64,000 bases of DNA from Macrostomum lignano (Eukaryota). The translations under genes were made by a program, and so were the position numbers. This document shows, in pieces, positions 37,601-60,502 of this stretch (positions are counted from its first letter, which is position 1; each line of letters starts with the position of its first letter). The stretch covers positions 857,335-921,334 of the forward strand of contig NIVC01000033.1 of NCBI GenBank assembly GCA_002269645.1, in the 5' to 3' direction. Under the pieces are notes generated by a model. That model was not told where the DNA came from, searched no databases, and worked only from the letters and a program-made list of their open reading frames with translations.

Positions 37601-40600
37601 AAGTAAAAGATTGCAAAAAAATAATTCAGCCTGTTTCGCATAAAACGTAAAAAGTATTGTTAGACATTTTATTGATTTCTAGAACACAATACAAGCCTCT
37701 GGATTCATACTTATCTATATCTATCATTTTCAGCAGAGACTCATGCAGACAATCCGATGTTTCCCTTATCCAGATTAATTTAAAATCAGTCCTCGTCAGG
37801 ATTACGAGGCTGCCCAGGTCTGGCATGTCAGAAAGCAGTTAATCATATGCAGACACGCAGCGGTGCTATCGGACGGTGAAATCAGCAATGCTACATCGGT
37901 CTGCAGGCTGTCTGAGCCCTCCAGCATTACCTAAACCGGGGCAGTCTACCAGTCTATGAAGCTAGCGCGATCCTGCTAAAATCTTAGACACCGACTGTCC
38001 GCATAAATCATAGCGTAGTCTAAGATTAGAAGGAAATTCCTAATTGGCTGGAGCCCAAGAAGCAAAAAGTACTTTTGCGTTCAAAATTCAATTAATTCAA
38101 TTACGAGCCCGCTCGCTCTCCGAGGCCGCTGGCCGGGTAGCCGCATCCCCATAACATTTTGGTAGGTCGTTTTTAAAACGGCTTTTTGCCTTTAGCCTTG
38201 CATCCCAGGACCTCCCTGGGGAGAGAAGGGGAGAAATCTGTGTCCCTTGGACGAAGATGAATGAAGACTTGAAGCGAAATTGGCACAGGCAAGCTAAGAC
38301 AAAAGAGAATGAGACAGCGCATCTGTCGCTGTTTGAGATTCTGTCACGTGCGCTGGCTGTATTTGCAGTTTGCAGCAGCATTTTGGCAGTAAATTCTCTC
38401 TGATCTGAATTCCTGACGCTGATTCTGTGAAGCTTTTATCCGATCTTGCCTCATATTGCACAGCTGTACTGCCCTATCAGCAGCTGGCTGCTTATTGCTC
38501 TCAAGGATGGAATTATCTCAGCCTAGATTTTCAGCTGAAATTAGACACCGAAATGAATTTATAAAACACTGAACTCAGAATTTTTCTGTATGCCGAGCTG
38601 ATAAAAAATGATGAATAGAAAATGAAACAATGCGGAAGCTCGAAGACCGGCCTAAATATTTGGATCTGATTAGAATAGACCAGCAATGGAGCGCGTGCTT
38701 GTTTTGAGATTCACCGTGTTCACAAAAAAGTAATTATCTTCAATGAATGAAACTTATTGCAATTTTTCCAGCTCATCTTTTTCGGTTTTGACTCTGTGTT
38801 GCCAACTCTTTCATGACGCAATGCTTTCAGCCGATCCCAGCCTTCAAGAGACCCAGCGATTTATGCCATTAGTTGAGCACAGAACTCACTTCCGACTTGA
38901 AATGCAACTAATCATTGTACGGTTGATGCAAATTTTAAGTCTCCCCAAAGTTTTCCGTCTGAATTTTAGTCTGAAGCGGAAACGGCACCAGCTAACACAG
39001 CAATTCAACCGGAAGCCAGCTTGCAACAGTCATGTTTCTTTTGTTTGCTGCAGTATTATTTGTACCCAACCCAAGGTGCCTCTGATATGATAGTTTGACC
39101 CTAAACAACCTTTGCCCAGAGTTATAAGACTCACTGTCTGGTTCCATCAGAAGCCGCATATTGGCGTTGATAACGTCCCACGACTTTGTGACATTTATGC
39201 AGTCAATGAATGCCGCCACCTTCTGCGGGTTGAGCTTCTTGTACTGCTCCACCTCCGAGACCACGTTAAACACGGACCACGGGCTCCAGAAGAAGGCAAA
39301 GCTGATCACTATGCTTATTAAGATTCGATTCGTGCGCCGTTTTCTCTCAGTCTCCCGCTTATGCTGCACAATCCTCCCACTGAGGCGGCGGTAGATGCAA
39401 AAGTACAGCGCGCCGGTGACGATTAGCGGCGTGCAGAACTGCAGGCAGAAGGCGCCGATCGAGTACACCAGACGGAGACTCTTGTCGGGCCAGCGCTCTG
39501 CGCAGTAGCCGATGGTCTGGCGAGTCTCCACCTGAAGTGGTTTGCGATTCGCCATGAAGTTGGACTACCAGGGTCTCATACATTCCTGAGGAAAAAACCC
39601 TAAGAGCAAAAAGGATAACGATTTCTATCGCGACCATGCCAGCTGGGCTTACCTACGATTGCAGAGTACTTACATAATCTGGGTATCTGGGAATTGAGAT
39701 GGCGCGTTCTTCCATGACCCAAACCCGGGTTCGGTTTTCTGCCAAAATCTCTCTGAGCAATCTCGCTCATGATTCTGCATTTCTCTATGCTGTGTCTCGA
39801 TAGCAAACTGAACAGATCCTGAGGGAACAAGCGACCGAAAGAGTACAGCAGAAAATGGCCCCTTGAACAAACAAATTGGAGCAGATTAAAGAGTTTTCTC
39901 CCTGCAGAACAGGAATTTGCACTCAGTGCAGATCTGCTGGAGGCAATCCACGTCCGGCAACTGCCACTCGCACTTGGTTGGTCGGTGCCCATTTGCAGTG
40001 GATGCAGCCGCCTCTAAGTAACTACGAACTAATTTCAGTCGTAGAGAACTCAGAAACAATTGTTCCTTTTCCCAGAATGCCACGGCAGCACCAGCCCCAC
40101 TAGCATCGACCCTACCGTGTTGAAGACTATCGCAGGCGAGTGCACCAACAAGCCGAGCAGCACAGTCAGGAGCAGGAGACCCCCAGCTTCTCTGCGGCTC
40201 ATTCTCCGGCCGTGGGGATGGCAGATCAGCCTGTACCGATCTACCGCTACCCACAGTATGATGAGGCAGCTTGCGTAGATCGGCACGCTGAGCGAAGTGA
40301 GCAGCACGCGGCAGTAGAAGGTCCTCGGTAGACTGGCAGCAATGTAGTTCCGGCGGGTGAGATCGTACACCAGCAGCGATGGCATCAGCATGCCACAGAT
40401 GAGGATGTCGCTGAGCGACAGGCCCAGCACAAACATGTTAGTCACGTTGGCGAATTCGCGTCGCTTTAACAAGCTGACTGCGACCATGAGGTTGCTGAAC
40501 AGCCCAAGCAGGATGAGCAGCGCGTACAGAACCAGCAACAGTGCCACCACAGCGACGCCATCGGGTTTTCCAGCAGCGGAGGCCGTGGAATCGGCAGAAT

Positions 40601-40739
40601 CAGTGGCATCTGAATCTGTCACCGTTGCATCTTCCAGAGATGGTGGGGGCGGGACGGGGCCACTCGTGTTCAGACTGCTCAGGTAGTAATTGAAGCAGAG
40701 TGATCTGCAGGTAGAAAGCAATTTACTTATGCTGCACAT
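34689..40739 (-). CDS. Rhodopsin-family neuropeptide GPCR (NPY/NPF/sNPF/PrRP-receptor type), 3 exons (40739-40116, 39531-39135, 35074-34689), about 468 aa
   Basis: GLFSNLMV (TM1), NVTNMFVLGLSLSDIL (TM2), VAVDRYRLICHP (TM3), CAERWP (ECL2), RRTNRIL..FFWSPWSVFN (TM6), CVNPYLYGWLN (TM7). Phases are consistent. The start codon is uncertain because a good acceptor lies just downstream of ATG 40739. Confidence 0.9.
35101..35450. repeat. 10-bp minisatellite (GGATGGATCT) in GPCR intron 2
   Basis: Direct observation; lies about 25 nt from the acceptor. Confidence 0.97.
35519..35988. repeat. 24-bp minisatellite (AGGCACACAGGCACACAATCATGT) in GPCR intron 2
   Basis: Essentially perfect 24-nt periodicity. 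Confidence 0.97.
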
Positions 40740-49944: not shown

Positions 49945-51817
49945 CTACTGGAAGCGAAATTCTCCCACCACTGGGAAGTGATCCGACAAGTGCCGAGTCC
50001 TGAGCCTGGCGTTGCAGCCGCTGGAATCCGGCGCCACATAGCTCGGCTGAAACGGCGCCGAGATGCACAAATTCACAGGCGCATCGGCAAGCAGGCGGAC
50101 AGCGCGGATGCTTGAGGACACCGGCTGCTTGTGCTCGCGACTGACGAACACATAGTCCAGCCACTGGCGCACCGTGATGCCCGGCTCCACTACGTCATTC
50201 TGCTTCGGGTCGTAGGTAGAGCGCAGTGGGCCTCTAAGCCGGGGCAGACGGGCGTTGAGCCTCTGCAGCAAGCGGCTGACGTGGCCTCGGTTGGCCAGCA
50301 GGTCCGCGTTGAAGTCGCCCGCGAAAATTACCGGCTCATTGGGGCTGATCTGGCGAGACTGGGCGAAGCGGTGCAGTTCATCCGCTTGCTTCTCTCGATA
50401 GGCATCGAACTCGGGGCCATCCTCTGCCTGAAAATGTGAGAGGCACCCAGCACCCGACTGCAGCAAAATTCAAGGCCTATTTTATCCTGAGAGCCATCTT
50501 AACAATGGAAATACGCTTGTACATCTAAAACCGATCTTGGCTGTACTTCGTATTGACTCCGTTTAATTTCATTAGCGGCTATCTGACATCAAAGTTAAAA
50601 AACAAGTTACCTGTAAATGTGTGCCAAATAGGTGAAACACGGAACCCAGCTTGTCTATCTTGGCGTGAACCACACCTTTGTTGGCTAGAGAATCAGCGCT
50701 GCCAGGGTGCGCGTTGAGGTACACCGCCTGCGCCTGCTGCAGGATCGGCCAGCGAGAAGCGACGAACACGCCGCCGTTAATCCGCAGACCCCATCGGCGC
50801 ACTCCGACCGTCCGAGTCGAGTAATTGAATCCGTAGCTGCGAAGCAGGCCGCGCAAACTGAACGTGTCGCTGCTGTCCGCTAGGCAACCCGGCTGGAATG
50901 CCTCCTGGAAAACGATTGCGTCAGCACCGGGGACCTCGGCCAGCAGAGCTGCGGGTCACCGATCAGTTCCGATATCCGGTATTACAAAACCTACCCTGAC
51001 TAGGCACCCTGATACAACGCATTCTGACCCATAAGCCGACCCTGTTCTATATCAAACAATCAAGTGGCCACGCACACACCGTGAGCACAGCGGCCAAAGC
51101 TGTCCTTTGGTCGCATCGACAAGGGCGATGACTGCACAGGCGAAACCGGAGAGCTAACATCGATGTCATGCAACTCTCCCCGACTATTGACTCGTCGAAC
51201 TCTTTACTCAACGGTGCTTTTTTCCTGGCCCTCCAAAAAAGCGATTGATTGATCTTTGAGACCCAACCACCTCTAACCTCAAACATCGAACTTCGAATTA
51301 AAGCTCGAAACATTTTCGGATCTCTATTAATCAGCTTTAGCTCTCTCATCACTCTCAAAGCACTGCCAGCCTTTACCCCGCGGAATACGGCAGGTTCGCT
51401 CCCGCTGCCCGTCATGCGACACCAGGTACGGCCGGGCGAACACATTGTAGGACACTATGGTCAGCCGGCCGGCATCCGTGCTGTCCAGCCGCTTCGACAG
51501 TGTCTTTGCCCGGCAAAAAACCTTCGAACCTGTCCAGCAGGTGCTGCCGTCGCCGGCGGAGTCCAGTCGGTCGAACAGCAGGTCCAGCTTGTGGCAGCTG
51601 CTGGACTGATGAGCGCCGCAGATGGGCGCTGAGCCTGCGAGTTTGGGCAGAAATCAAGTAAAGCGTATCAATAAAACAGTAAAAATTCCTTGTAGTTACC
51701 CAGCCAAACTCCGGCAGTTTCTTGCGCAGCCGCAGGGGAAGACAGCAGCAACAGTAGCAGCAGCAGATGACGACGACCACCTGGAAGAATCCAGGAAAAT
51801 TCCACTCGAGCTGTCAT
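49945..51817 (-). CDS. Secreted sphingomyelinase C (bacterial beta-toxin-type, EEP/DNase I fold), 4 exons (51817-51700, 51634-51377, 50948-50611, 50427-49945), about 398 aa
   Basis: Signal peptide ([16 protein letters not shown]); LTIVSYNV, FQEAF, NGGVFVASRWPI, DSLANKGVVHAKI, GTHLQAED, GDFN, STYD, LDYVF and SDHFPV are all present. Introns are GT-AG with consistent phases. Confidence 0.9.
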
Positions 51818-52789
51818 CGTTATTCTAATTTTTGGGCTGGTTAGTTTGACATGCTGCTGAATGCTTGCGCTGGGAATCCTCAGGCGTTTGGGCCGCTCTA
51901 TCAGTACCGTTAAATAAAATTGCAAAACTTATGAGTTGCCACCTGTGAGACGAGATTCTGCTTATCGTTGCACCAATCGTTGCAACAGTTTTGACACTAT
52001 CAGCAGCAGAAACTGCGTGTCACGCCATGGCTAATGCTTATTTTCGTATAGAACCGCGAATGCAAATGACAGTGTTTCATGGTGACCTTTAGCCCACAAA
52101 GATATCTATAGCATTCAAAGGCATTCAACGCTCAATTTTTTTTATTTTTAGTTTGCAATGCTGGAACAGTGGAAGTAGCCCCATTTAAAGAAATTGTAAG
52201 ACATTCAACACTTGCTACTTCCATTGGTAGCGAGATGCACACACAGCTATATAATTTAAAGAAATAAAAAACTGCCACTGAAATTTAACGGTCACACGAA
52301 AGTACAATACGAGTACAGCCATTTTATCTACAATAAATTTGAATTTTTAAATTAGCATTCACTACTTTGAGTTTGGATATTATACGTTCAAATTAGTGAT
52401 TTTAGGTATGCTTACATAATAAAACTTAAAAGCTCTCCAAAGTTGCCGAGGAAGTGATCTCGTCCGACTGCTCAAAGCAAATATTCGACTGAAGCCGTTT
52501 CGCTTCGTACGAATTTCTACTTGCTTGTACTTTATATATCTGGAATTCAAGGCGCTGGCAGATGAATTGGGAACTGCTTCCACTACCAGAATTGCCACGT
52601 TTTGAGTTTAGTGCCTGCCGGGGCTCATGCTAAAATTCGGAAATGCATTCAGTAGGTCGGAGTTCGGTTCGACTTCGGTCGGAGTTTCTGCATGTACGAT
52701 TGCTTAATTCAGAGATTGGGGTGAACGTGTCTGACTCTCGCTCTTCCACATCTGCTTTGACACATTTGGGGAAAAACTCGCGCGGGAAA

Positions 52790-54436
52790 ACATCCAGTGG
52801 GGAAACCTCGCTGCGGGAAAACCTCCTGCGGGAAAACCTCCTGCGGGAAAACCTCCTGCGGGAAAACCTCCTGCGGGAAAACCTCCAGTGGGGAAACCTC
52901 CTGCGGGAAAACCTCCAGTGGGGAAACCTCCTGCGGGAAAACCTCCAGTGGGGAAACCTCGCTGCGGGAAAACCTCCTGCGGGAAAACCTCCAGTGGGGA
53001 AACCTCCTGCGGGAAAACCTCCAGTGGGGAAACCTCCTGCGGGAAAACCTCCAGTGGGGAAACCTCGCTGCGGGAAAACCTCCTGCGGGAAAACCTCCAG
53101 TGGGGAAACCTCGCTGCGGGAAAACCTCGGCGGGAAAACCTCGGCGGGAAAACCTCGGCGGGAAAACCTCCTGCGGGAAAACCTCCAGTTGGGAAACCTC
53201 GCTGCGGGAAAACTTCCTGCGGGAAAACCTCCAGTGGGGAAACCTCCTGCGGGAAAACCTCCTGCGGGAAAACCTCCTGCGGGAAAACCTCGGCGGGAAA
53301 ACCTCGGCGGGAAAACCTCGGCGGGAAAACCTCCTGCGGGAAAACCTCCAGTGGGAAAACCTCCTGCGGGAAAACCTCCTGCGGGAAAACCTCCTGCGGG
53401 AAAACCTCGGCGGGAAAACCTCGGCGGGAAAACCTCCTGCGGGAAAACCTCCAGTTGGGAAACCTCGCTGCGGGAAAACTTCCTGCGGGAAAACCTCCAG
53501 TGGGGAAACCTCGCTGCGGGAAAACCTCCTGCGGGAAAACCTCCTGCGGGAAAACCTCGGCGGGAAAACCTCGGCGGGAAAACCTCCTGCGGGAAAACCT
53601 CCAGTTGGGAAACCTCGCTGCGGGAAAACTTCCTGCGGGAAAACCTCCAGTGGGGAAACCTCGCTGCGGGAAAACCTCCTGCGGGAAAACCTCCTGCCGG
53701 AAAACCTCCAGTGGGAAAACCTCCTGCGGGAAAACCTCCTGCGGGAAAACCTCCTGCGGGAAAACCTCGGCGGGAAAACCTCGGCGGGAAAACCTCGGCG
53801 GGAAAACCTCCTGCGGGAAAACCTCGGCGGGAAAACCTCGGCGGGAAAACCTCGGCGGGAAAACCTCCTGCGGGAAAACCTCCAGTGGGGAAACCTCGCT
53901 GCGGGAAACCCTCCTGCGGGAAAACCTCCTGCCGGAAAACCTCCAGTGGGAAAACCTCCTGCGGGAAAACCTCCTGCGGGAAAACCTCCTGCGGGAAAAC
54001 CTCGGCGGGAAAACCTCGGCGGGAAAACCTCCTGCGGGAAAACCTCCAGTTGGGAAACCTCGCTGCGGGAAAACTTCCTGCGGGAAAACCTCCAGTGGGG
54101 AAACCTCGCTGCGGGAAACCCTCCTGCGGGAAAAACTCCAGTGGGGAAACCTCGCTGCGGGAAAACCTCCTGCAGGAAAACCTCGGCGGGAAAACCTCGG
54201 CGGGAAAACCTCCTGGGGGAAAACCTCGCTGCGGGAAAACCTCGGTGGGAAAACCTCGGCGGGAAAACCTCGGCGGGAAAACCTCGGCGGGAAAACCTCG
54301 GGGGGAAACCTCGCTGCGGGAAAACCTCGGCGGGAAAACCTCGGCGGGAAAACCTCGGTGGGAAAACCTCGGCGGGAAAACCTCGGTGGGAAAACCTCGG
54401 CGGGAAAACCTCGGCGGGAAAACCTCCTGCGGGAAA
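52790..54436. repeat. 1.65-kb mosaic minisatellite of 14-16-bp units built on GGGAAAACCTC
   Basis: Variant units GCGGGAAAACCTCCT, CCAGTGGGGAAACCT, CGCTGCGGGAAAACCT and CGGCGGGAAAACCT recur in blocks; source of the 500-670 aa pseudo-ORFs. Confidence 0.97.
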
Positions 54437-56451: not shown

Positions 56452-57763
56452 ATGCTGCGTCAGCTACTTCGCCATCTTGCTCGACAGCAGCCCCTGAGCT
56501 GGAGGTTCATTTTCTGCGCTGTAATCGCAGTAGCAACCCTCTTGACGATTTGCACTGCACCCATGAGAATTCGGTCGTTGAACAATGACTTCCCAAAGAT
56601 GGCCTGCCTTTCGTCCAGTAGACTGCCATTAGCTCGTAAAATCCCAAGCAGTCTGTTTCGACATCTCGGCAACTGGAGCTTCGAGGAGCCGGCAAGACTA
56701 GCCAAGTTGTGTCGCCCAGACGCCAGACAAACGAATCACGAGTTTCCAGTGAAGCGAGCCTCATTTCCACAGACTCTGTTAGCAATTGTTCCGATCACTT
56801 CGGAAATGTCTGAGCAGCGGAAAGATCTGAGGCGAGTATTGAGCTTGCGTTTCAAACTTTTATTAAAATAATTCGCTTTTCAAGTGAAAAAGAGAAAAGG
56901 GGCAAAATTAGCACGCTTAAGATCCCACTTAATTGCCTTCCAGACTAACATGGGGCTCCGAATTGAACAAGAACTTCGGCCAGCTACTATTCCTAGTGCA
57001 GCTGGAGTGGGGCACCTCACCACCAAAGGAACTGATGCTGGAAAACCAAAGGCAGCAGGATATCCTGATTGCCTATCACAATGGTGAGCCCAGAGGTGAC
57101 TCCTATGGTACGCTGGTGCTAAAGATGATCGCCGGATTGCAATGGTACGCCAAAGCCTGCCATGGGGGATTTAAATTTGTGCTCAAATCGGACTACGACT
57201 CCTACTGGAACGTTGAGTCTCTTGTCAACCTGCTCCTTCGGCATCGACATTCGGAGCCGCTCGTGCTCGGCTCAGTTCAGGAGAGCGCCTCTGTGCTTCG
57301 CGATCCGCAGTCAGATTTCTACGTATCGCAGGAGGCCTACTCAGACAGTCACTTCCCTGCATACGTGTCGGGAGGACCTGGCTACGCGATGTCCCGAGCC
57401 GCGGCCGTGTCCATCGCCAGCTTGGCCGAGTATCACGTGCCTCGCAATGGCGCTCTGTGGCTGGAGGACGTATACATTACTGGGCTGCTTCCGGCTGTGG
57501 GCTACTCAACCTGCAACGGCAGCTCAAGTTCCGCATTTTTGCACCTGCACTCGGACTATGTATATATCTGTCGCTACATGGAGTTTACAGCCGAAATGGT
57601 GACGCGGTGGCCACCACTGGCCATGCACCGAGTGCGCGGGCGTCAACTGCACGATCTGCACGCTTGGGCGCGCGGTGCGGGTGCAGCTGAGATCGCTCAG
57701 AAAAAGCATAGCATTGTGTACAGCAGGAAACTGTGTGAGAAAACTGGCAAATCACTACCATGA
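56452..57763 (+). CDS. Beta-1,3-galactosyltransferase-like glycosyltransferase (CAZy GT31), 2 exons (56452-56831, 56944-57763), about 399 aa
   Basis: Type II N-terminal anchor; after splicing RKDLRLTWG (RxxxRxTWG); ENQRQQDIL; DSYGTLVLKM; FVLKSDYD (DxD); PAYVSGGPGYAMS; EDVYITG. Confidence 0.88.
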
Positions 57764-59239: not shown

Positions 59240-60502
59240 TTCAGATCCCAGTTCGCCTGGTGCGCCTAGACAAGGATTTCTAGACAAGGTGTTGGTGCGC
59301 AGTCCAGGCAGGCTGACGTATTCAGAACCACAAGACTCATTGTGTGGGATGAGATCTCCATTGCTGACCTCAATGACATGGAGGCTGTTGACCGGACTCT
59401 GTGGGACATCCGGAAGCAGGATTCGCCATTTGGCGGAATCGTGCTGGTGTGCTGCGGAGACTTCCGGCAGTTGCTTCTGGTGGTGCAGAAAGGAACCAGG
59501 GCCAACAGCGTCCAGGCGTGCGTCAGTAGGTCCAGCCTGTGGAGATCATTCCGACGGCACCGCCTGACTCGAAACCTGCGGCTGCTGAGCGGCTCCGATG
59601 CTGCGCTGTGTCAGCGCTACTCAAAGCTGCTTCTGCAGTTAATTGCTTTGAGCTCTGTGTAAATAATTTTTAATGACATTGTCAGTAAAGAGAAGATATA
59701 AAGGGCTAAACTTGCTGTTTAATTCAGGATATACTTTGAAGGTTCGATTCCTTCGATTTTCTCCATGCAGATCGGTTCCAGCACTATCCAGAAGGATAGA
59801 GCTGCTTCCTCCAGAGATCCTGATGCCGTCCAATGCCTCGCTGAAGGACAGTTTTTCTACCCATCGTTCGACGCATCTGCGGATAGAGACGGCCATTTCG
59901 CCGGCGGAGCCATCCTGGTGCCTTACAATGAGTCCGTGGACGCCATCAACGATGAGTGTCCGGCCTTGTTCCCTGGCAGCCTGCGGGAGTATCGGTCTGT
60001 GGACAGCGCGTCCGATGAAGACTCCGCCACACACTTCCCACCGGAGCTGCTGAACCGGCTAGAGGCGCCGAACCTGCCAAAGCACCTGCTTAAGTTTAAG
60101 GTGGGCATGCCTGTGGTTTTGCTGCGGAACCTCAACCCACCTCGGCTGTGCAATGGCACGCGATTGATTGTTCTGGCACTGGGAGACAATGTACTCCGCT
60201 GCAAAGGGGCAGCTGGCCACTTCGCAGGCGATGAGGTGCTGCCGCATTGCATCCCGCTGGAGCCGAACAATGTTTTTAAGCGGTTGCGGTTTCCTCAGTG
60301 ACCCAGCTTCTGCCTGTCGATCCACAAGTTGCAGGGCCAGTCGCTGGAGACCGCTGGCTTTGACCTTACGGTAGGCGTGCTCACACACGGCCAGCTGTAC
60401 ACGGCGCTGTCTCGAGCAAAATATGCAGGAAATGTTTGCGTTCGGATTAGCGGTAATAAGACGCGAAATATTGTGTACCCGGAGGTGCTCTCTGCAGATT
60501 AG
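59240..60502 (+). mobile_element. Helitron RepHel PIF1-like helicase, C-terminal remnant, inactivated
   Basis: RLIVWDEIS..EAVDRTL.DIR..PFGG....GDFRQLL, LKFKVGMPVVLLRNLNPPRLCNGTRLIV, SIHKLQGQSL..HGQLYTALSR and TRNIVYPEVL. In-frame TGA at 60299-60301; intron 59639-59770 has lost its GT; no Rep domain seen. Confidence 0.9.

What the first reader, a model, noticed from the sequence alone, without database searches (positions are those of the whole stretch)
49945..51817. Intron-containing, secreted sphingomyelinase C of the bacterial beta-toxin type in an animal genome
Seen: four GT-AG exons encode a signal peptide, a 4-Cys N-terminal segment and a complete catalytic domain. Established: the run DSLANKGVVHAKIDK..HLFGTHLQAED..R.KQ..EL..F..ISPNEPVIFAGDFN..LNA.LP..G..STYD..N..LDYVF..SDHFPV parallels Bacillus cereus SMase / Staphylococcus beta-haemolysin (DNLSNKGFVYTKIKK..GTHLQAED..IPNDEYVLIGGDMN..SDHYPV). 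The metal/catalytic N, E, H, D-x-N, D and D-H residues are intact. It lacks the membrane anchors of SMPD2/SMPD3. Where the bacterial enzymes have an aromatic membrane-binding hairpin, this protein has a two-Cys loop (LCISAPFQPSYVAPDSSGC). Inference: a domesticated horizontal acquisition, or an ancient lineage lost from vertebrates, possibly acting as a secreted cytolytic, digestive or defensive enzyme.
Basis: partly seen in the sequence, partly recalled or inferred. Interest (0 to 1): 0.75.

Follow-up and report, generated by a model that had tools for sequence, protein, structure and literature searches.

The report
Secreted bacterial-type sphingomyelinase C gene, flatworm
This is an intact four-exon flatworm (Macrostomum lignano) gene for a secreted sphingomyelinase C of the bacterial type; it is not a recent bacterial import but belongs to an old, little-studied family found in many marine invertebrates, whose closest relatives are bacterial enzymes carrying the same small cysteine-rich add-on domain.

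Summary
On the minus strand, 51817-49945, four GT-AG exons (118/258/338/483 nt) give a 398-aa protein with no stops. It is 98% identical to Macrostomum lignano BOX15_Mlig027641g1, whose NCBI model has the same exon structure.

The protein has a signal peptide, a 46-aa four-Cys module, and an EEP-fold catalytic domain. All central-site residues of bacterial SMase C are kept. The hairpin is extended and closed by two Cys. The best sequence and fold matches are B. cereus, Listeria, Streptomyces and S. aureus SMase C. Human nSMase1/2 match much less well.

A recent "domesticated HGT" into the flatworm is not supported. Homologues with the same architecture occur in flatworms, annelids, a priapulid, echinoderms and hemichordates. 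A phase-1 intron sits at the same codon in seven genes from five phyla. This fits "ancient lineage, lost from vertebrates".

The module and the two-Cys loop also occur in uninterrupted bacterial genes. In bacteria the module is a mobile secreted domain, also fused to SMase D/PLD-type enzymes. An ancient bacteria-to-animal transfer is therefore the likeliest deep origin.

Substrate and biological role are untested. I found no paper on this animal family.

The parts
49945..51817 (-). Whole CDS, ATG to stop, of the secreted SMase C-like gene (398 aa), four exons
   Evidence: Searches give the splice model with no stops; 98% identical to M. lignano BOX15_Mlig027641g1; the NCBI model of that gene has an identical exon structure.
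51700..51817 (-). Exon 1 (118 nt): Met1, signal peptide (Leu8 h-region, SSPAAA|QE) and the first residues (V-W-L) of the Cys module. It ends in phase 1.
51635..51699 (-). Intron 1 (65 nt, GT-AG, phase 1), between W-L and G40. Its position and phase are shared with the paralog and with Owenia, Ptychodera, Antedon, Diadema and Priapulus.
51377..51634 (-). Exon 2 (258 nt): the rest of the four-Cys module (C45, C53, C72, C80), the linker, and the start of the catalytic domain (N103, C121)
51513..51706 (-). Coding span of the 46-aa two-disulfide module (W38..C80, interrupted by intron 1). This is an uncharacterised secreted domain shared with bacterial proteins.
   Evidence: Searches show module families in bacteria and animals. 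AF2 pLDDT 92; no Pfam or PDB relative.
50949..51376 (-). Intron 2 (428 nt, GT-AG, phase 1). Shared with the M. lignano paralog Mlig017582 but absent from the other phyla examined.
50611..50948 (-). Exon 3 (338 nt): catalytic core with E141 (Mg2+ ligand), C147, the N183-G-G motif and H236
50428..50610 (-). Intron 3 (183 nt, GT-AG, phase 0). Shared with the paralog Mlig017582.
   Evidence: The acceptor is confirmed by the alignment to PDB SMases.
49945..50427 (-). Exon 4 (483 nt including the stop at 49945-49947): D276-x-N278, D329, the extended hairpin, and D387-H388. There is no C-terminal anchor.
50014..50067 (-). Two-Cys loop C359-ISAPFQPSYVAPDSSG-C376 at the apex of the hairpin that corresponds to the aromatic membrane-binding hairpin of bacterial SMase C
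   Evidence: translation; strands 351-361 and 378-384 flank the loop; 45 aa here against 29 aa in Bc-SMase between the aligned blocks; the Cys pair is conserved across the subfamily.

Best explanation
The locus is a functional Macrostomum lignano gene for a secreted, soluble, metal-dependent phosphodiesterase of the bacterial sphingomyelinase C type (EEP / DNase-I fold).

Architecture:
- Signal peptide.
- One 46-aa module held by two disulfides.
- Catalytic domain with a third disulfide (C121-C147).
- A hairpin 16 residues longer than in Bc-SMase, with its apex loop stapled by C359-C376.

Shown:
- The gene model.
- The fold.
- Retention of every central-site residue (N103, E141, H236, D276, N278, D387, H388).
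- Absence of any membrane anchor.
- Membership of a family spread over at least five bilaterian phyla that shares a phase-1 intron.
- Existence of bacterial genes with the same module + catalytic domain + two-Cys-loop architecture.

Inferred mechanism:
- After secretion, the enzyme docks on the outer leaflet of a membrane or lipid particle through the N-terminal module and the stapled hairpin. It does not use the 'edge' metal site of the Bacillus enzyme, which is not conserved here.
- It then cleaves the phosphodiester of sphingomyelin or a related phosphosphingolipid to ceramide plus the phospho-head group. Catalysis would be the Glu-Mg2+ / His-Asp general-base chemistry of Bc-SMase.

Inferred history:
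- A ready-made module + SMase C gene passed between bacteria and the bilaterian stem lineage, most parsimoniously from bacteria to animal.
- It gained an intron two codons into the module.
- It was then inherited vertically, with many duplications and losses. No chordate, arthropod, nematode, mollusc or cnidarian member was seen among the named hits.
- It is not a recent flatworm-specific acquisition.
For: Gene model:
- establish the splice model.
- Animal context: neighbouring GPCR and galactosyltransferase ORFs, and a near-identical locus in an independent assembly.

Family:
- PF03372.
- TIGR03395, 108.7 bits.
- PDB sequence hits are only bacterial SMase C / beta-haemolysin, E 1e-21 to 5e-15.

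Fold:
- AF2 pLDDT 90.1, pTM 0.88.
- Foldseek top 16 hits are all bacterial SMase C, TMt 0.76-0.84, E down to 2.8e-25.
- Human nSMase1 scores E 9.5e-16 with TMt 0.57. Human nSMase2 scores E 1.6e-11 with TMt 0.58.

Catalytic residues:
- Mapped through to the B. cereus numbering given in PMC9710629.
- Tabulated across 145 domains.

Distribution: named homologues in Macrostomum, Cichlidogyrus, Owenia, Dimorphilus, Priapulus, four echinoderm classes and three hemichordates.

Shared intron: it lies at W-[LIV]|G/D in phase 1 in seven genes of five phyla.

Bacterial counterparts:
- P0035 / L017 and L032 (Thioalkalispiraceae MAGs), P0058 / P0176, P0040 and P0173.
- All are uninterrupted ORFs among bacterial genes.

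Nested characters:
- Module + loop occur in bacterial groups A and B and in Metazoa.
- The C121-C147 pair occurs only in group B and Metazoa.

NJ bootstrap:
- The module/loop subfamily is supported at 99%.
- Metazoa + group B at 71%.
- Metazoa monophyletic at 57-64%.

Module as a mobile bacterial domain: it is fused to SMase D/PLD-type GDPD, discoidin, PLA2G12-like and astacin domains, or occurs alone.
Against: - No activity, substrate or expression data exist for this protein or any animal member that I could find.
- The TIGR03395 score is far below the equivalog cut-off (108.7 against 248.2 bits). Strict functional equivalence with the bacterial enzymes is therefore not established by the curated model.
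- Three of four edge-metal-site residues differ from Bc-SMase.
- Deep nodes of my NJ tree are weak. Metazoan monophyly is only 57-64%, and phylum-level clades are not recovered.
- The flatworm protein is about as similar to bacterial group B (37-41% identity) as to other animals (35-42%).
- The direction of transfer is inferred from distribution and domain promiscuity, not shown.
- Several sequences nearest to the window protein (P0003-5, P0033) are unnamed metagenome or SRA contigs of unknown organism.
- Absence from chordates, arthropods and other phyla rests only on the names that happened to be returned.
Confidence: 0.72

Rival explanations
1. Recent, lineage-specific horizontal acquisition: Macrostomum or its close relatives took up a bacterial SMase C gene, which then gained introns and a signal peptide.
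For: - The best solved-structure and curated-model matches are bacterial.
- Bacterial proteins with the same module and loop exist, at 37-41% identity to the window protein.
- Introns 2 and 3 are specific to the Macrostomum lineage.
Against: - Homologues with the same architecture occur in five bilaterian phyla.
- Intron 1 has the same position and phase in flatworm, annelid, priapulid, echinoderm and hemichordate genes.
- All named animal sequences fall together in the NJ tree, in 57-64% of bootstraps.
- Two divergent M. lignano paralogs (33% identity) share all three introns, so the gene is old even within the lineage.
Confidence: 0.06
2. Assembly contamination: the stretch is bacterial DNA mis-assembled into an animal scaffold.
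For: Only the bacterial-type similarity of the protein.
Against: - There are three spliceosomal GT-AG introns with lower GC than the exons.
- The flanking ORFs are a rhodopsin-type GPCR and a galactosyltransferase.
- The same locus, with flanks 96-98% identical, is present in a second assembly.
- The bacterial relatives are at most about 41% identical.
Confidence: 0.01
3. The family is an ancient eukaryotic or animal invention, and the bacterial copies with the module and loop were acquired from animals (reverse transfer). Alternatively, the family descends vertically from the last common ancestor with massive loss.
For: - Group-B bacterial sequences are not monophyletic (10% bootstrap) and sit next to the animal clade.
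- The bacteria concerned come from marine or sediment metagenomes, where contact with invertebrates is plausible.
- Eukaryote-looking proteins also carry the module, for example the astacin P0204.
Against: - The module occurs in many unrelated bacterial architectures and phyla: Alpha-, Gamma- and Deltaproteobacteria, Gemmatimonadota, Myxococcota, and cultured Bradyrhizobium and Pseudomaricurvus.
- Characters are nested within bacteria. Generic SMase C comes first, then module + loop, then the C121-C147 pair, before the animal clade.
- 2211 mostly catalytic-domain-only relatives form the background.
- No named hit came from fungi, plants, vertebrates or non-bilaterian animals.
Confidence: 0.12
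4. It has the fold and chemistry of SMase C but a different physiological substrate. Candidates are ceramide phosphoethanolamine or ceramide aminoethylphosphonate (the major phosphosphingolipids of many invertebrates), lysophospholipids, or a non-lipid phosphodiester. On this reading 'sphingomyelinase' is a misnomer.
For: - The score is below the TIGR03395 equivalog cut-off.
- The edge metal site is altered and the hairpin remodelled.
- The extra module has unknown specificity.
- From general knowledge: EEP enzymes span nucleases, inositol phosphatases and lipid phosphodiesterases, and many invertebrates have little sphingomyelin.
Against: - The closest structures by a wide margin are true SMases.
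- All central-site residues are kept.
- In bacteria the same module is also fused to SMase D/PLD-type domains, which points to phospho(sphingo)lipid membranes as the common target.
Confidence: 0.3

Closest known systems
Bacterial sphingomyelinase C: B. cereus Bc-SMase (PDB 2ddr, 2dds, 2uyr), Listeria SmcL (1zwx), S. aureus beta-toxin (3i41, 3i5v), Streptomyces SMase (7cne)
   Same: - Same EEP fold: TMt 0.81-0.84, sequence E about 1e-21.
- Same central metal and acid-base residues: N16, E53, H151, D195, N197, D295 and H296 correspond to N103, E141, H236, D276, N278, D387 and H388.
- Secreted and soluble.
- A protruding hairpin lies between the last strands.
   Different: - About 25% identity.
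- Encoded by an intron-containing animal gene.
- An extra N-terminal 46-aa two-disulfide module.
- An extra C121-C147 pair.
- The hairpin region is 16 residues longer, and its apex loop is closed by a disulfide instead of ending in the exposed Trp-Phe pair.
- Edge metal site: only F is kept, from F55/N57/E99/D100.
- Scores below the TIGR03395 equivalog cut-off.
Uncharacterised bacterial 'module + SMase C' proteins from metagenomes and MAGs: P0040, P0036/P0173, P0045 and P0048 (group B); P0035, P0195, P0058 and P0050 (group A, e.g. Thioalkalispiraceae MAGs)
   Same: - Same overall architecture: signal peptide, 1-5 copies of the Cys module, catalytic domain, two-Cys hairpin loop.
- Group B also shares the C121-C147 pair.
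- 34-41% identity to the window protein, the same range as animal homologues from other phyla.
   Different: - Uninterrupted ORFs in bacterial gene neighbourhoods.
- Group A has a Cys-rich insertion before the LDY motif and often an extra N-terminal beta-rich domain.
- None is characterised.
Animal 'sphingomyelinase C-like' predicted proteins: Saccoglossus, Ptychodera, Anneissia, Antedon, Diadema, Strongylocentrotus, Patiria, Holothuria, Owenia, Dimorphilus, Priapulus
   Same: - Same family: module, catalytic residues and all three conserved Cys pairs beyond the module.
- Same phase-1 intron.
   Different: - 33-42% identity.
- In the other phyla examined the module and whole catalytic domain lie in one exon. 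Macrostomum has two further introns.
- Many ambulacrarian members end in a hydrophobic tail (GPI-signal or TM-like), have 2-3 modules, a C-type lectin, or two enzyme units in tandem.
- The flatworm protein is the minimal soluble form.
Eukaryotic neutral sphingomyelinases SMPD2/nSMase1 (PDB 8j2f) and SMPD3/nSMase2 (5uvg)
   Same: Same superfamily fold and the same type of reaction.
   Different: - Much more distant: Foldseek E 9.5e-16 and 1.6e-11 with TMt 0.57-0.58, and no sequence hit at E<=0.01.
- They are membrane-anchored intracellular enzymes.
- The window protein has a signal peptide and no anchor.
GDPD-type SMase D / PLD toxins of sicariid spiders and their bacterial relatives
   Same: They act on the same lipids. 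Bacterial members of this fold (P0199, P0200, P0206, L016, L020) carry the same Cys module as the window protein.
   Different: The catalytic fold is unrelated (TIM-barrel GDPD, against EEP). The window gene has no such domain. Tick IsSMase is of this type, not of the window's type.

Membership tests
Bacterial-type sphingomyelinase C (EEP fold; TIGR03395 / Bc-SMase, SmcL, beta-toxin) | EEP (DNase-I-like) catalytic fold, closest to solved SMase C structures | tested here: met
   PF03372, E 1.3e-11. AF2 model pLDDT 90. The top 16 Foldseek hits are all bacterial SMase C, TMt 0.76-0.84.
Bacterial-type sphingomyelinase C (EEP fold; TIGR03395 / Bc-SMase, SmcL, beta-toxin) | Central metal-binding and acid-base residues (Bc-SMase N16, E53, H151, D195, N197, D295, H296) | tested here: met
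   N103, E141, H236, D276, N278, D387 and H388, from the alignment and the residue roles in PMC9710629. These positions are nearly invariant across the 145 aligned domains; the paralog P0041/P0184 is an exception at three of them.
Bacterial-type sphingomyelinase C (EEP fold; TIGR03395 / Bc-SMase, SmcL, beta-toxin) | Score above the curated equivalog cut-off of TIGR03395 | tested here: not met
   108.7 bits against a cut-off of 248.2. It is a homologue but not an 'equivalog' by NCBI's criterion.
Bacterial-type sphingomyelinase C (EEP fold; TIGR03395 / Bc-SMase, SmcL, beta-toxin) | Edge metal-binding site (F55, N57, E99, D100) that contributes to membrane binding | tested here: not met
   The corresponding residues are F143, P145, I182 and N183. 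Most animal members have E-N at 182-183.
Bacterial-type sphingomyelinase C (EEP fold; TIGR03395 / Bc-SMase, SmcL, beta-toxin) | Solvent-exposed aromatic beta-hairpin (W284/F285 in Bc-SMase) for membrane binding | tested here: inconclusive
   A hairpin is predicted at the same place: strands 351-361 and 378-384. Its apex is a 16-residue disulfide-closed loop. It contains F364 and Y368, not a Trp-Phe tip.
Bacterial-type sphingomyelinase C (EEP fold; TIGR03395 / Bc-SMase, SmcL, beta-toxin) | Mg2+-dependent hydrolysis of sphingomyelin; haemolytic activity | not testable with these tools
   No biochemical data were found for any animal member.
Bilaterian 'module + SMase C' family (informal; NCBI 'sphingomyelinase C-like') | N-terminal W-x-G-x-x-P-x-C ... 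C ... C ... K-V-x-C module preceding the catalytic domain | tested here: met
   Window residues 38-80.
Bilaterian 'module + SMase C' family (informal; NCBI 'sphingomyelinase C-like') | Conserved Cys pairs C121/C147 and C359/C376 | tested here: met
   The four positions are Cys in all but two of the 33 named animal domains. P0008 has P at 376 and the fragment P0056 lacks position 121. They are invariant in alignment A3.
Bilaterian 'module + SMase C' family (informal; NCBI 'sphingomyelinase C-like') | Phase-1 intron two codons into the module (five codons before its first Cys) | tested here: met
   Window intron 1. The same position is found in P0041, Owenia P0009, Ptychodera P0013, Antedon P0010, Diadema P0015 and Priapulus P0057. 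The Saccoglossus P0018 mapping failed.
Eukaryotic neutral SMase (SMPD2 / SMPD3 type) | Closest sequence and structure relatives are nSMase1/2; hydrophobic membrane-anchoring segments | tested here: not met
   There is no nSMase hit at E<=0.01. Foldseek TMt is 0.57-0.58, against 0.81-0.84 for bacterial SMases. No KD19 window exceeds 1.6.

The most novel reading that the evidence does not exclude
A complete secreted 'targeting module + SMase C' gene was transferred from bacteria into the stem lineage of bilaterian animals and kept for over half a billion years in many marine phyla, while being lost in vertebrates. Its 46-aa two-disulfide module has no Pfam model in the copy searched and no solved relative. 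On this reading it is a new membrane or phosphosphingolipid-targeting domain that bacteria attach interchangeably to the two unrelated sphingomyelin-cleaving folds (SMase C-type EEP and SMase D/PLD-type GDPD) and to other secreted enzymes.
Probability: 0.3. Interest if true: 0.65.

Novelty: new variant of a known kind. Interest (0 to 1): 0.5.

Why it matters
Animals are usually described as having acid, neutral (SMPD2-4) and alkaline sphingomyelinases. A secreted bacterial-type SMase C family spread across flatworms, annelids, priapulids, echinoderms and hemichordates is present in databases only as automatic predictions, and I found no paper on it.

If the reading is right, three things follow:
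- It adds an extracellular sphingolipid-cleaving enzyme to invertebrate biology, with possible roles in digestion, defence, fertilisation or membrane remodelling.
- It is a clean case of an old inter-domain gene transfer, with a dated intron gain.
- It defines a small disulfide-rich domain whose repeated fusion to lipid phosphodiesterases suggests a membrane-targeting role. That bears on how bacterial SMase C and SMase D/PLD toxins find membranes.

For this window taken alone, the gene is an ordinary, intact member of that family.

Tried and rejected
I replaced it with a degenerate DNA pattern scan of GTDB genomes. Of 25 loci, most held true modules, and a few (L012, L015, L027) were partial or chance.
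- A profile search with the animal alignment added few new named taxa because of the word-index limit.
- Exact spliced mapping of Saccoglossus P0018 failed.
- dN/dS between the window gene and the copy in GCA_002269645.1 is uninformative. Only 10 of 1197 nt differ (2 synonymous, 8 non-synonymous, 4 of them in the signal peptide). Introns are 98.1% identical. My first ungapped comparison was wrong because of intron indels, and I discarded it.
No ML program was available.
- The module has no match in the Pfam copy I searched, in PDB sequences (best E 0.63) or in PDB folds (best E 4.6).
- PF27711, listed in precomputed annotations for three GDPD proteins, is not in the Pfam copy I could search. 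It is not listed for the multi-module SMases, so I do not equate it with the module.
- Tick IsSMase was considered as a known animal secreted SMase and rejected. It is an SMase D (GDPD) orthologue.
- Literature searches for this animal family found nothing. The HGT compendium paper had no searchable supplement.
I used the P0004 module as first row instead.

The evidence cited is the Pfam GDPD hit and the PDB search with P0200.
Full report
**Observation**

The finding's coordinates are the stop codon (49945-47) and the ATG (51817) of a gene on the minus strand. Reading the three reverse frames and joining four exons at canonical GT...AG sites gives a 1197-nt CDS of 398 codons without an internal stop.
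- Exons: 51817-51700, 51634-51377, 50948-50611, 50427-49945.
- Introns: 65, 428 and 183 nt, in phases 1, 1 and 0.
- Exons are 56-65% GC and introns 35-49%.

The second in-frame acceptor candidate for exon 4 (50457) is excluded. The chosen junction reproduces the contiguous ...GTHLQAED... block seen in solved bacterial enzymes.

The product is 98% identical over its whole length to Macrostomum lignano BOX15_Mlig027641g1. The window is therefore from this free-living flatworm. The NCBI model of that gene in GCA_002269645.1 has the same 118/258/338/483-nt exons.

The two copies are alleles or recent homeologues:
- 10 of 1197 exon bases differ.
- Introns are 98.1% identical.
- The 800-bp flanks are 96-98% identical.

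They therefore carry no usable dN/dS signal.

Neighbouring ORFs encode a rhodopsin-type GPCR and a galactosyltransferase. Contamination is excluded.

**What the protein is**

*Family matches*
- Pfam gives only PF03372.
- NCBIfam gives TIGR03395 'sphingomyelin phosphodiesterase' at 108.7 bits. That is a clear homologue but well under the 248.2-bit equivalog cut-off.
- Against PDB sequences, the only hits are SMase C of Listeria, B. cereus, S. aureus (beta-haemolysin) and Streptomyces, E 1e-21 to 5e-15. No eukaryotic nSMase appears at E<=0.01.

*Fold*
- An AlphaFold2 model with a 39-sequence alignment is confident: pLDDT 90.1, pTM 0.88.
- Its 16 best PDB matches are all bacterial SMase C, TMt 0.76-0.84 with E down to 2.8e-25.
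- Human nSMase1 (8j2f) reaches E 9.5e-16 with TMt 0.57.
- Human nSMase2 (5uvg) reaches E 1.6e-11 with TMt 0.58.

*Catalytic residues*

I used the HMMER alignment and the residue roles summarised in PMC9710629.
- Kept: N103 = N16, E141 = E53 (Mg2+ ligand), H236 = H151, D276 = D195, N278 = N197, D387 = D295 and H388 = H296.
- Not kept: the 'edge' metal site F55/N57/E99/D100, which is F143/P145/I182/N183 here.

*Other features*
- The protein has exactly eight Cys.
- There is one weak hydrophobic segment, the N-terminal Leu8 run followed by SSPAAA|QE.
- There is no transmembrane-grade segment and no C-terminal tail.

So it is predicted to be secreted and soluble.

**The two extras**

*The N-terminal module.* Residues 38-80 form a 46-aa module: W-[LIV]-G-x-A/S-P-x-C-x5-7-C ... 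G-D-G-x-x-C-x-x-G-x-K-V-x-C.
- A separate model of the homologous P0004 module has pLDDT 92. It shows three short strands and one short helix.
- It has no match in the Pfam copy searched, no PDB sequence relative and no fold match better than E = 4.6.

- It sits in the segment that aligns between the last conserved blocks of the bacterial enzymes.
- That segment is 45 residues here against 29 in Bc-SMase, where it holds the membrane-binding W284/F285 hairpin.
- The loop retains conserved aromatic or hydrophobic residues, F364 and the Y-V-x-P motif.

*A third Cys pair.* C121/C147 is invariant in the family.

**Distribution in animals**

Named proteins with the same architecture come from these groups:
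- Platyhelminthes: Macrostomum lignano (at least three loci) and the monogenean Cichlidogyrus.
- Annelida: Owenia (at least five genes) and Dimorphilus.
- Priapulida: Priapulus.
- Echinodermata: crinoids (Anneissia, Antedon), echinoids (Diadema, Strongylocentrotus), an asteroid (Patiria) and a holothurian (Holothuria).
- Hemichordata: Saccoglossus, Ptychodera and Glandiceps.

No chordate, arthropod, nematode, mollusc or cnidarian name appeared. Only about a third of the relevant clusters could be named, so absence is provisional.

I mapped annotated proteins exactly onto their loci. A phase-1 intron lies between W-[LIV] and the next codon, five codons before the module's first Cys, in:
- the window gene and its paralog Mlig017582,
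- Owenia,
- Ptychodera,
- Antedon,
- Diadema,
- Priapulus.

In Owenia, Ptychodera, Antedon and Diadema everything downstream is a single exon of 1.1-1.2 kb; Priapulus has one further intron in the catalytic domain. Macrostomum introns 2 and 3 are shared only with its own paralog.

One intron at an identical position and phase in five phyla is hard to explain except by a single ancestral bilaterian gene. It supports the alternative, 'ancient lineage lost from vertebrates'.

**Bacterial counterparts**

An exhaustive HMMER search found 2211 relatives, 113 of them at E<=1e-30. About 75 of the best 150 carry the two-Cys loop, and most of those have at least one module. Several of these are bacterial.

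- P0035 has four modules and comes from a Thioalkalispiraceae MAG. It sits beside a histidine-kinase/response-regulator gene and a GntR-family gene.
- P0058/P0176 lies between LysR and RecA genes.
- P0040 lies 24 bp downstream of a hydrolase gene, in two independent contigs.
- P0173 lies next to an IS transposase, in a stromatolite metagenome.

A degenerate-pattern scan of one genome per bacterial species found the module in many other secreted proteins:
- fused to GDPD-type phosphodiesterases (Bradyrhizobium australiense, a Hyphomicrobiaceae MAG);
- fused to discoidin domains plus a weak PLA2G12-like region (a Gemmatimonadaceae MAG);
- at the C-terminus of 854-aa proteins of Cellvibrionaceae;
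- alone or duplicated in small proteins of Bradyrhizobium and other Alphaproteobacteria.

A word-index search with the four-module region added more GDPD fusions, an astacin and a PAN-domain protein.

The GDPD domains of these fusions find the sicariid spider SMase D/PLD toxins as their best solved relatives, E 1e-12. In bacteria the module is thus attached to both unrelated sphingomyelin-cleaving folds. From this I infer, and only infer, that it is a membrane or phospholipid-surface targeting domain. Its occurrence in one to five tandem copies would give avidity.

**Relationships**

Discrete characters are nested:
- Generic bacterial SMase C has neither module nor loop.
- Bacterial group A (P0035, P0042, P0044, P0050, P0058, P0074, P0082) has both.
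- Bacterial group B (P0036, P0039, P0040, P0045, P0048, P0064, P0071, P0086) adds the C121/C147 pair.
- All named animal sequences have all three.

I ran neighbour-joining with 200 bootstraps on 74 sequences of known origin, 273 columns.

| Grouping | Bootstrap |
|---|---|
| Module/loop subfamily | 99% |
| Animals + group B | 71% |
| Animal monophyly | 57% (64% without the long-branched parasite) |

Phylum-level clades are not recovered, and the full tree is weak at depth. A proper ML analysis is needed.

With that caveat, the most parsimonious history has three steps:
- A bacterial gene that already encoded module + SMase C + stapled hairpin entered the bilaterian stem.
- It gained the intron.
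- It then diversified by duplication, module repetition, tandem enzyme units (Saccoglossus P0032), lectin fusion (Glandiceps P0055) and hydrophobic C-terminal tails in ambulacrarians, and was lost in several lineages.

Reverse transfer is not excluded. It is disfavoured by the module's wide and varied use in bacteria.

**How it most likely works**

Shown: secretion signal, absence of an anchor, intact central catalytic site, SMase C fold.

Inferred:
- The enzyme acts outside the cell on the outer face of membranes or lipid particles.
- It binds through the module and the disulfide-stapled aromatic loop rather than through the Bacillus-type edge metal site.
- It hydrolyses sphingomyelin or a related phosphosphingolipid to ceramide and the phospho-head group, by Mg2+-assisted general-base catalysis.

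Whether the role is digestive, defensive, cytolytic or developmental cannot be told from sequence.

The M. lignano paralog Mlig017582 has G, Q and Q at the E141, H236 and N278 positions. It keeps all Cys and all introns. It is therefore probably a non-catalytic binding protein. That suggests the non-catalytic surfaces have a function of their own.

**Novelty**

The gene and its homologues exist in databases as 'hypothetical protein', 'sphingomyelin phosphodiesterase' or 'sphingomyelinase C-like'. I found no paper on the animal family, the module or the bacterial counterparts. Cordes and Binford (PMC6299612) mention an unclassified ~150-residue N-terminal region in two proteobacterial SMase D/PLD-like proteins. 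It may be three copies of this module, but I could not check.

For this window the verdict is an intact ordinary member of an under-described family. At family level it is a new variant of a known enzyme kind.

In my thinking I once recalled from memory a short motif fragment of spider SMase D when I first saw the bacterial GDPD fusions. It was not used.

Noticed in passing
window 52769-54436: A 15-bp minisatellite of about 112 copies lies roughly 950 bp upstream of the SMase start codon. It produces spurious 500-670-aa ORFs in several frames on both strands.
   Followed up: partly
window 38995-40739 (-): Two ORF pieces match the rhodopsin-family GPCR model 7tm_1 (profile positions 2-126 and 132-250). 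This is a neighbouring animal gene with at least one intron.
   Followed up: partly
window 56933-57760 (+) and 59765-60298 (+): A galactosyltransferase (PF01762) ORF and a Pif1-helicase 2B-domain ORF. The latter may belong to a Helitron-type repeat.
   Followed up: no
L037 2001-6179 (M. lignano Mlig017582, P0041/P0184): This divergent paralog has the same three intron positions and phases and all eight Cys. It has G, Q and Q in place of the Mg2+-ligand Glu, the catalytic His and the Asn of D-x-N. It is probably a pseudoenzyme.
   Followed up: partly
P0031 (UniRef A0A1I8GK12, M. lignano, 775 aa): Another copy's gene model carries about 375 residues of unrelated sequence exactly at the intron-2 position. 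It looks like a model reading through a repeat inserted in that intron. The window copy's intron 2 is only 428 nt.
   Followed up: no
L016 4478-5719, L020 1505-2740; P0199, P0200, P0206: These bacterial proteins (Bradyrhizobium australiense, a Hyphomicrobiaceae MAG and metagenomes) combine 1-3 copies of the same Cys module with a GDPD domain. That domain's best solved relatives are spider SMase D/PLD toxins.
   Followed up: partly
L008, L010, L013, L021, L023, L024, L031 (Bradyrhizobium spp. and Alphaproteobacteria MAGs): A conserved small (~145-aa) secreted protein made of one Cys module plus a second Cys-rich tail. It has no Pfam match and its function is unknown.
   Followed up: no
P0032 (Saccoglossus), P0055 (Glandiceps), alignment A3 C-termini: Ambulacrarian elaborations of the family: two complete module + enzyme units in one protein, an N-terminal C-type lectin fusion, and hydrophobic C-terminal tails (GPI-signal or TM-like) that the flatworm protein lacks.
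   Followed up: partly
P0204 (SRA assembly, 738 aa): A eukaryote-looking astacin metalloprotease with two copies of the module at its C-terminus. The module is therefore not restricted to lipid phosphodiesterases.
   Followed up: no
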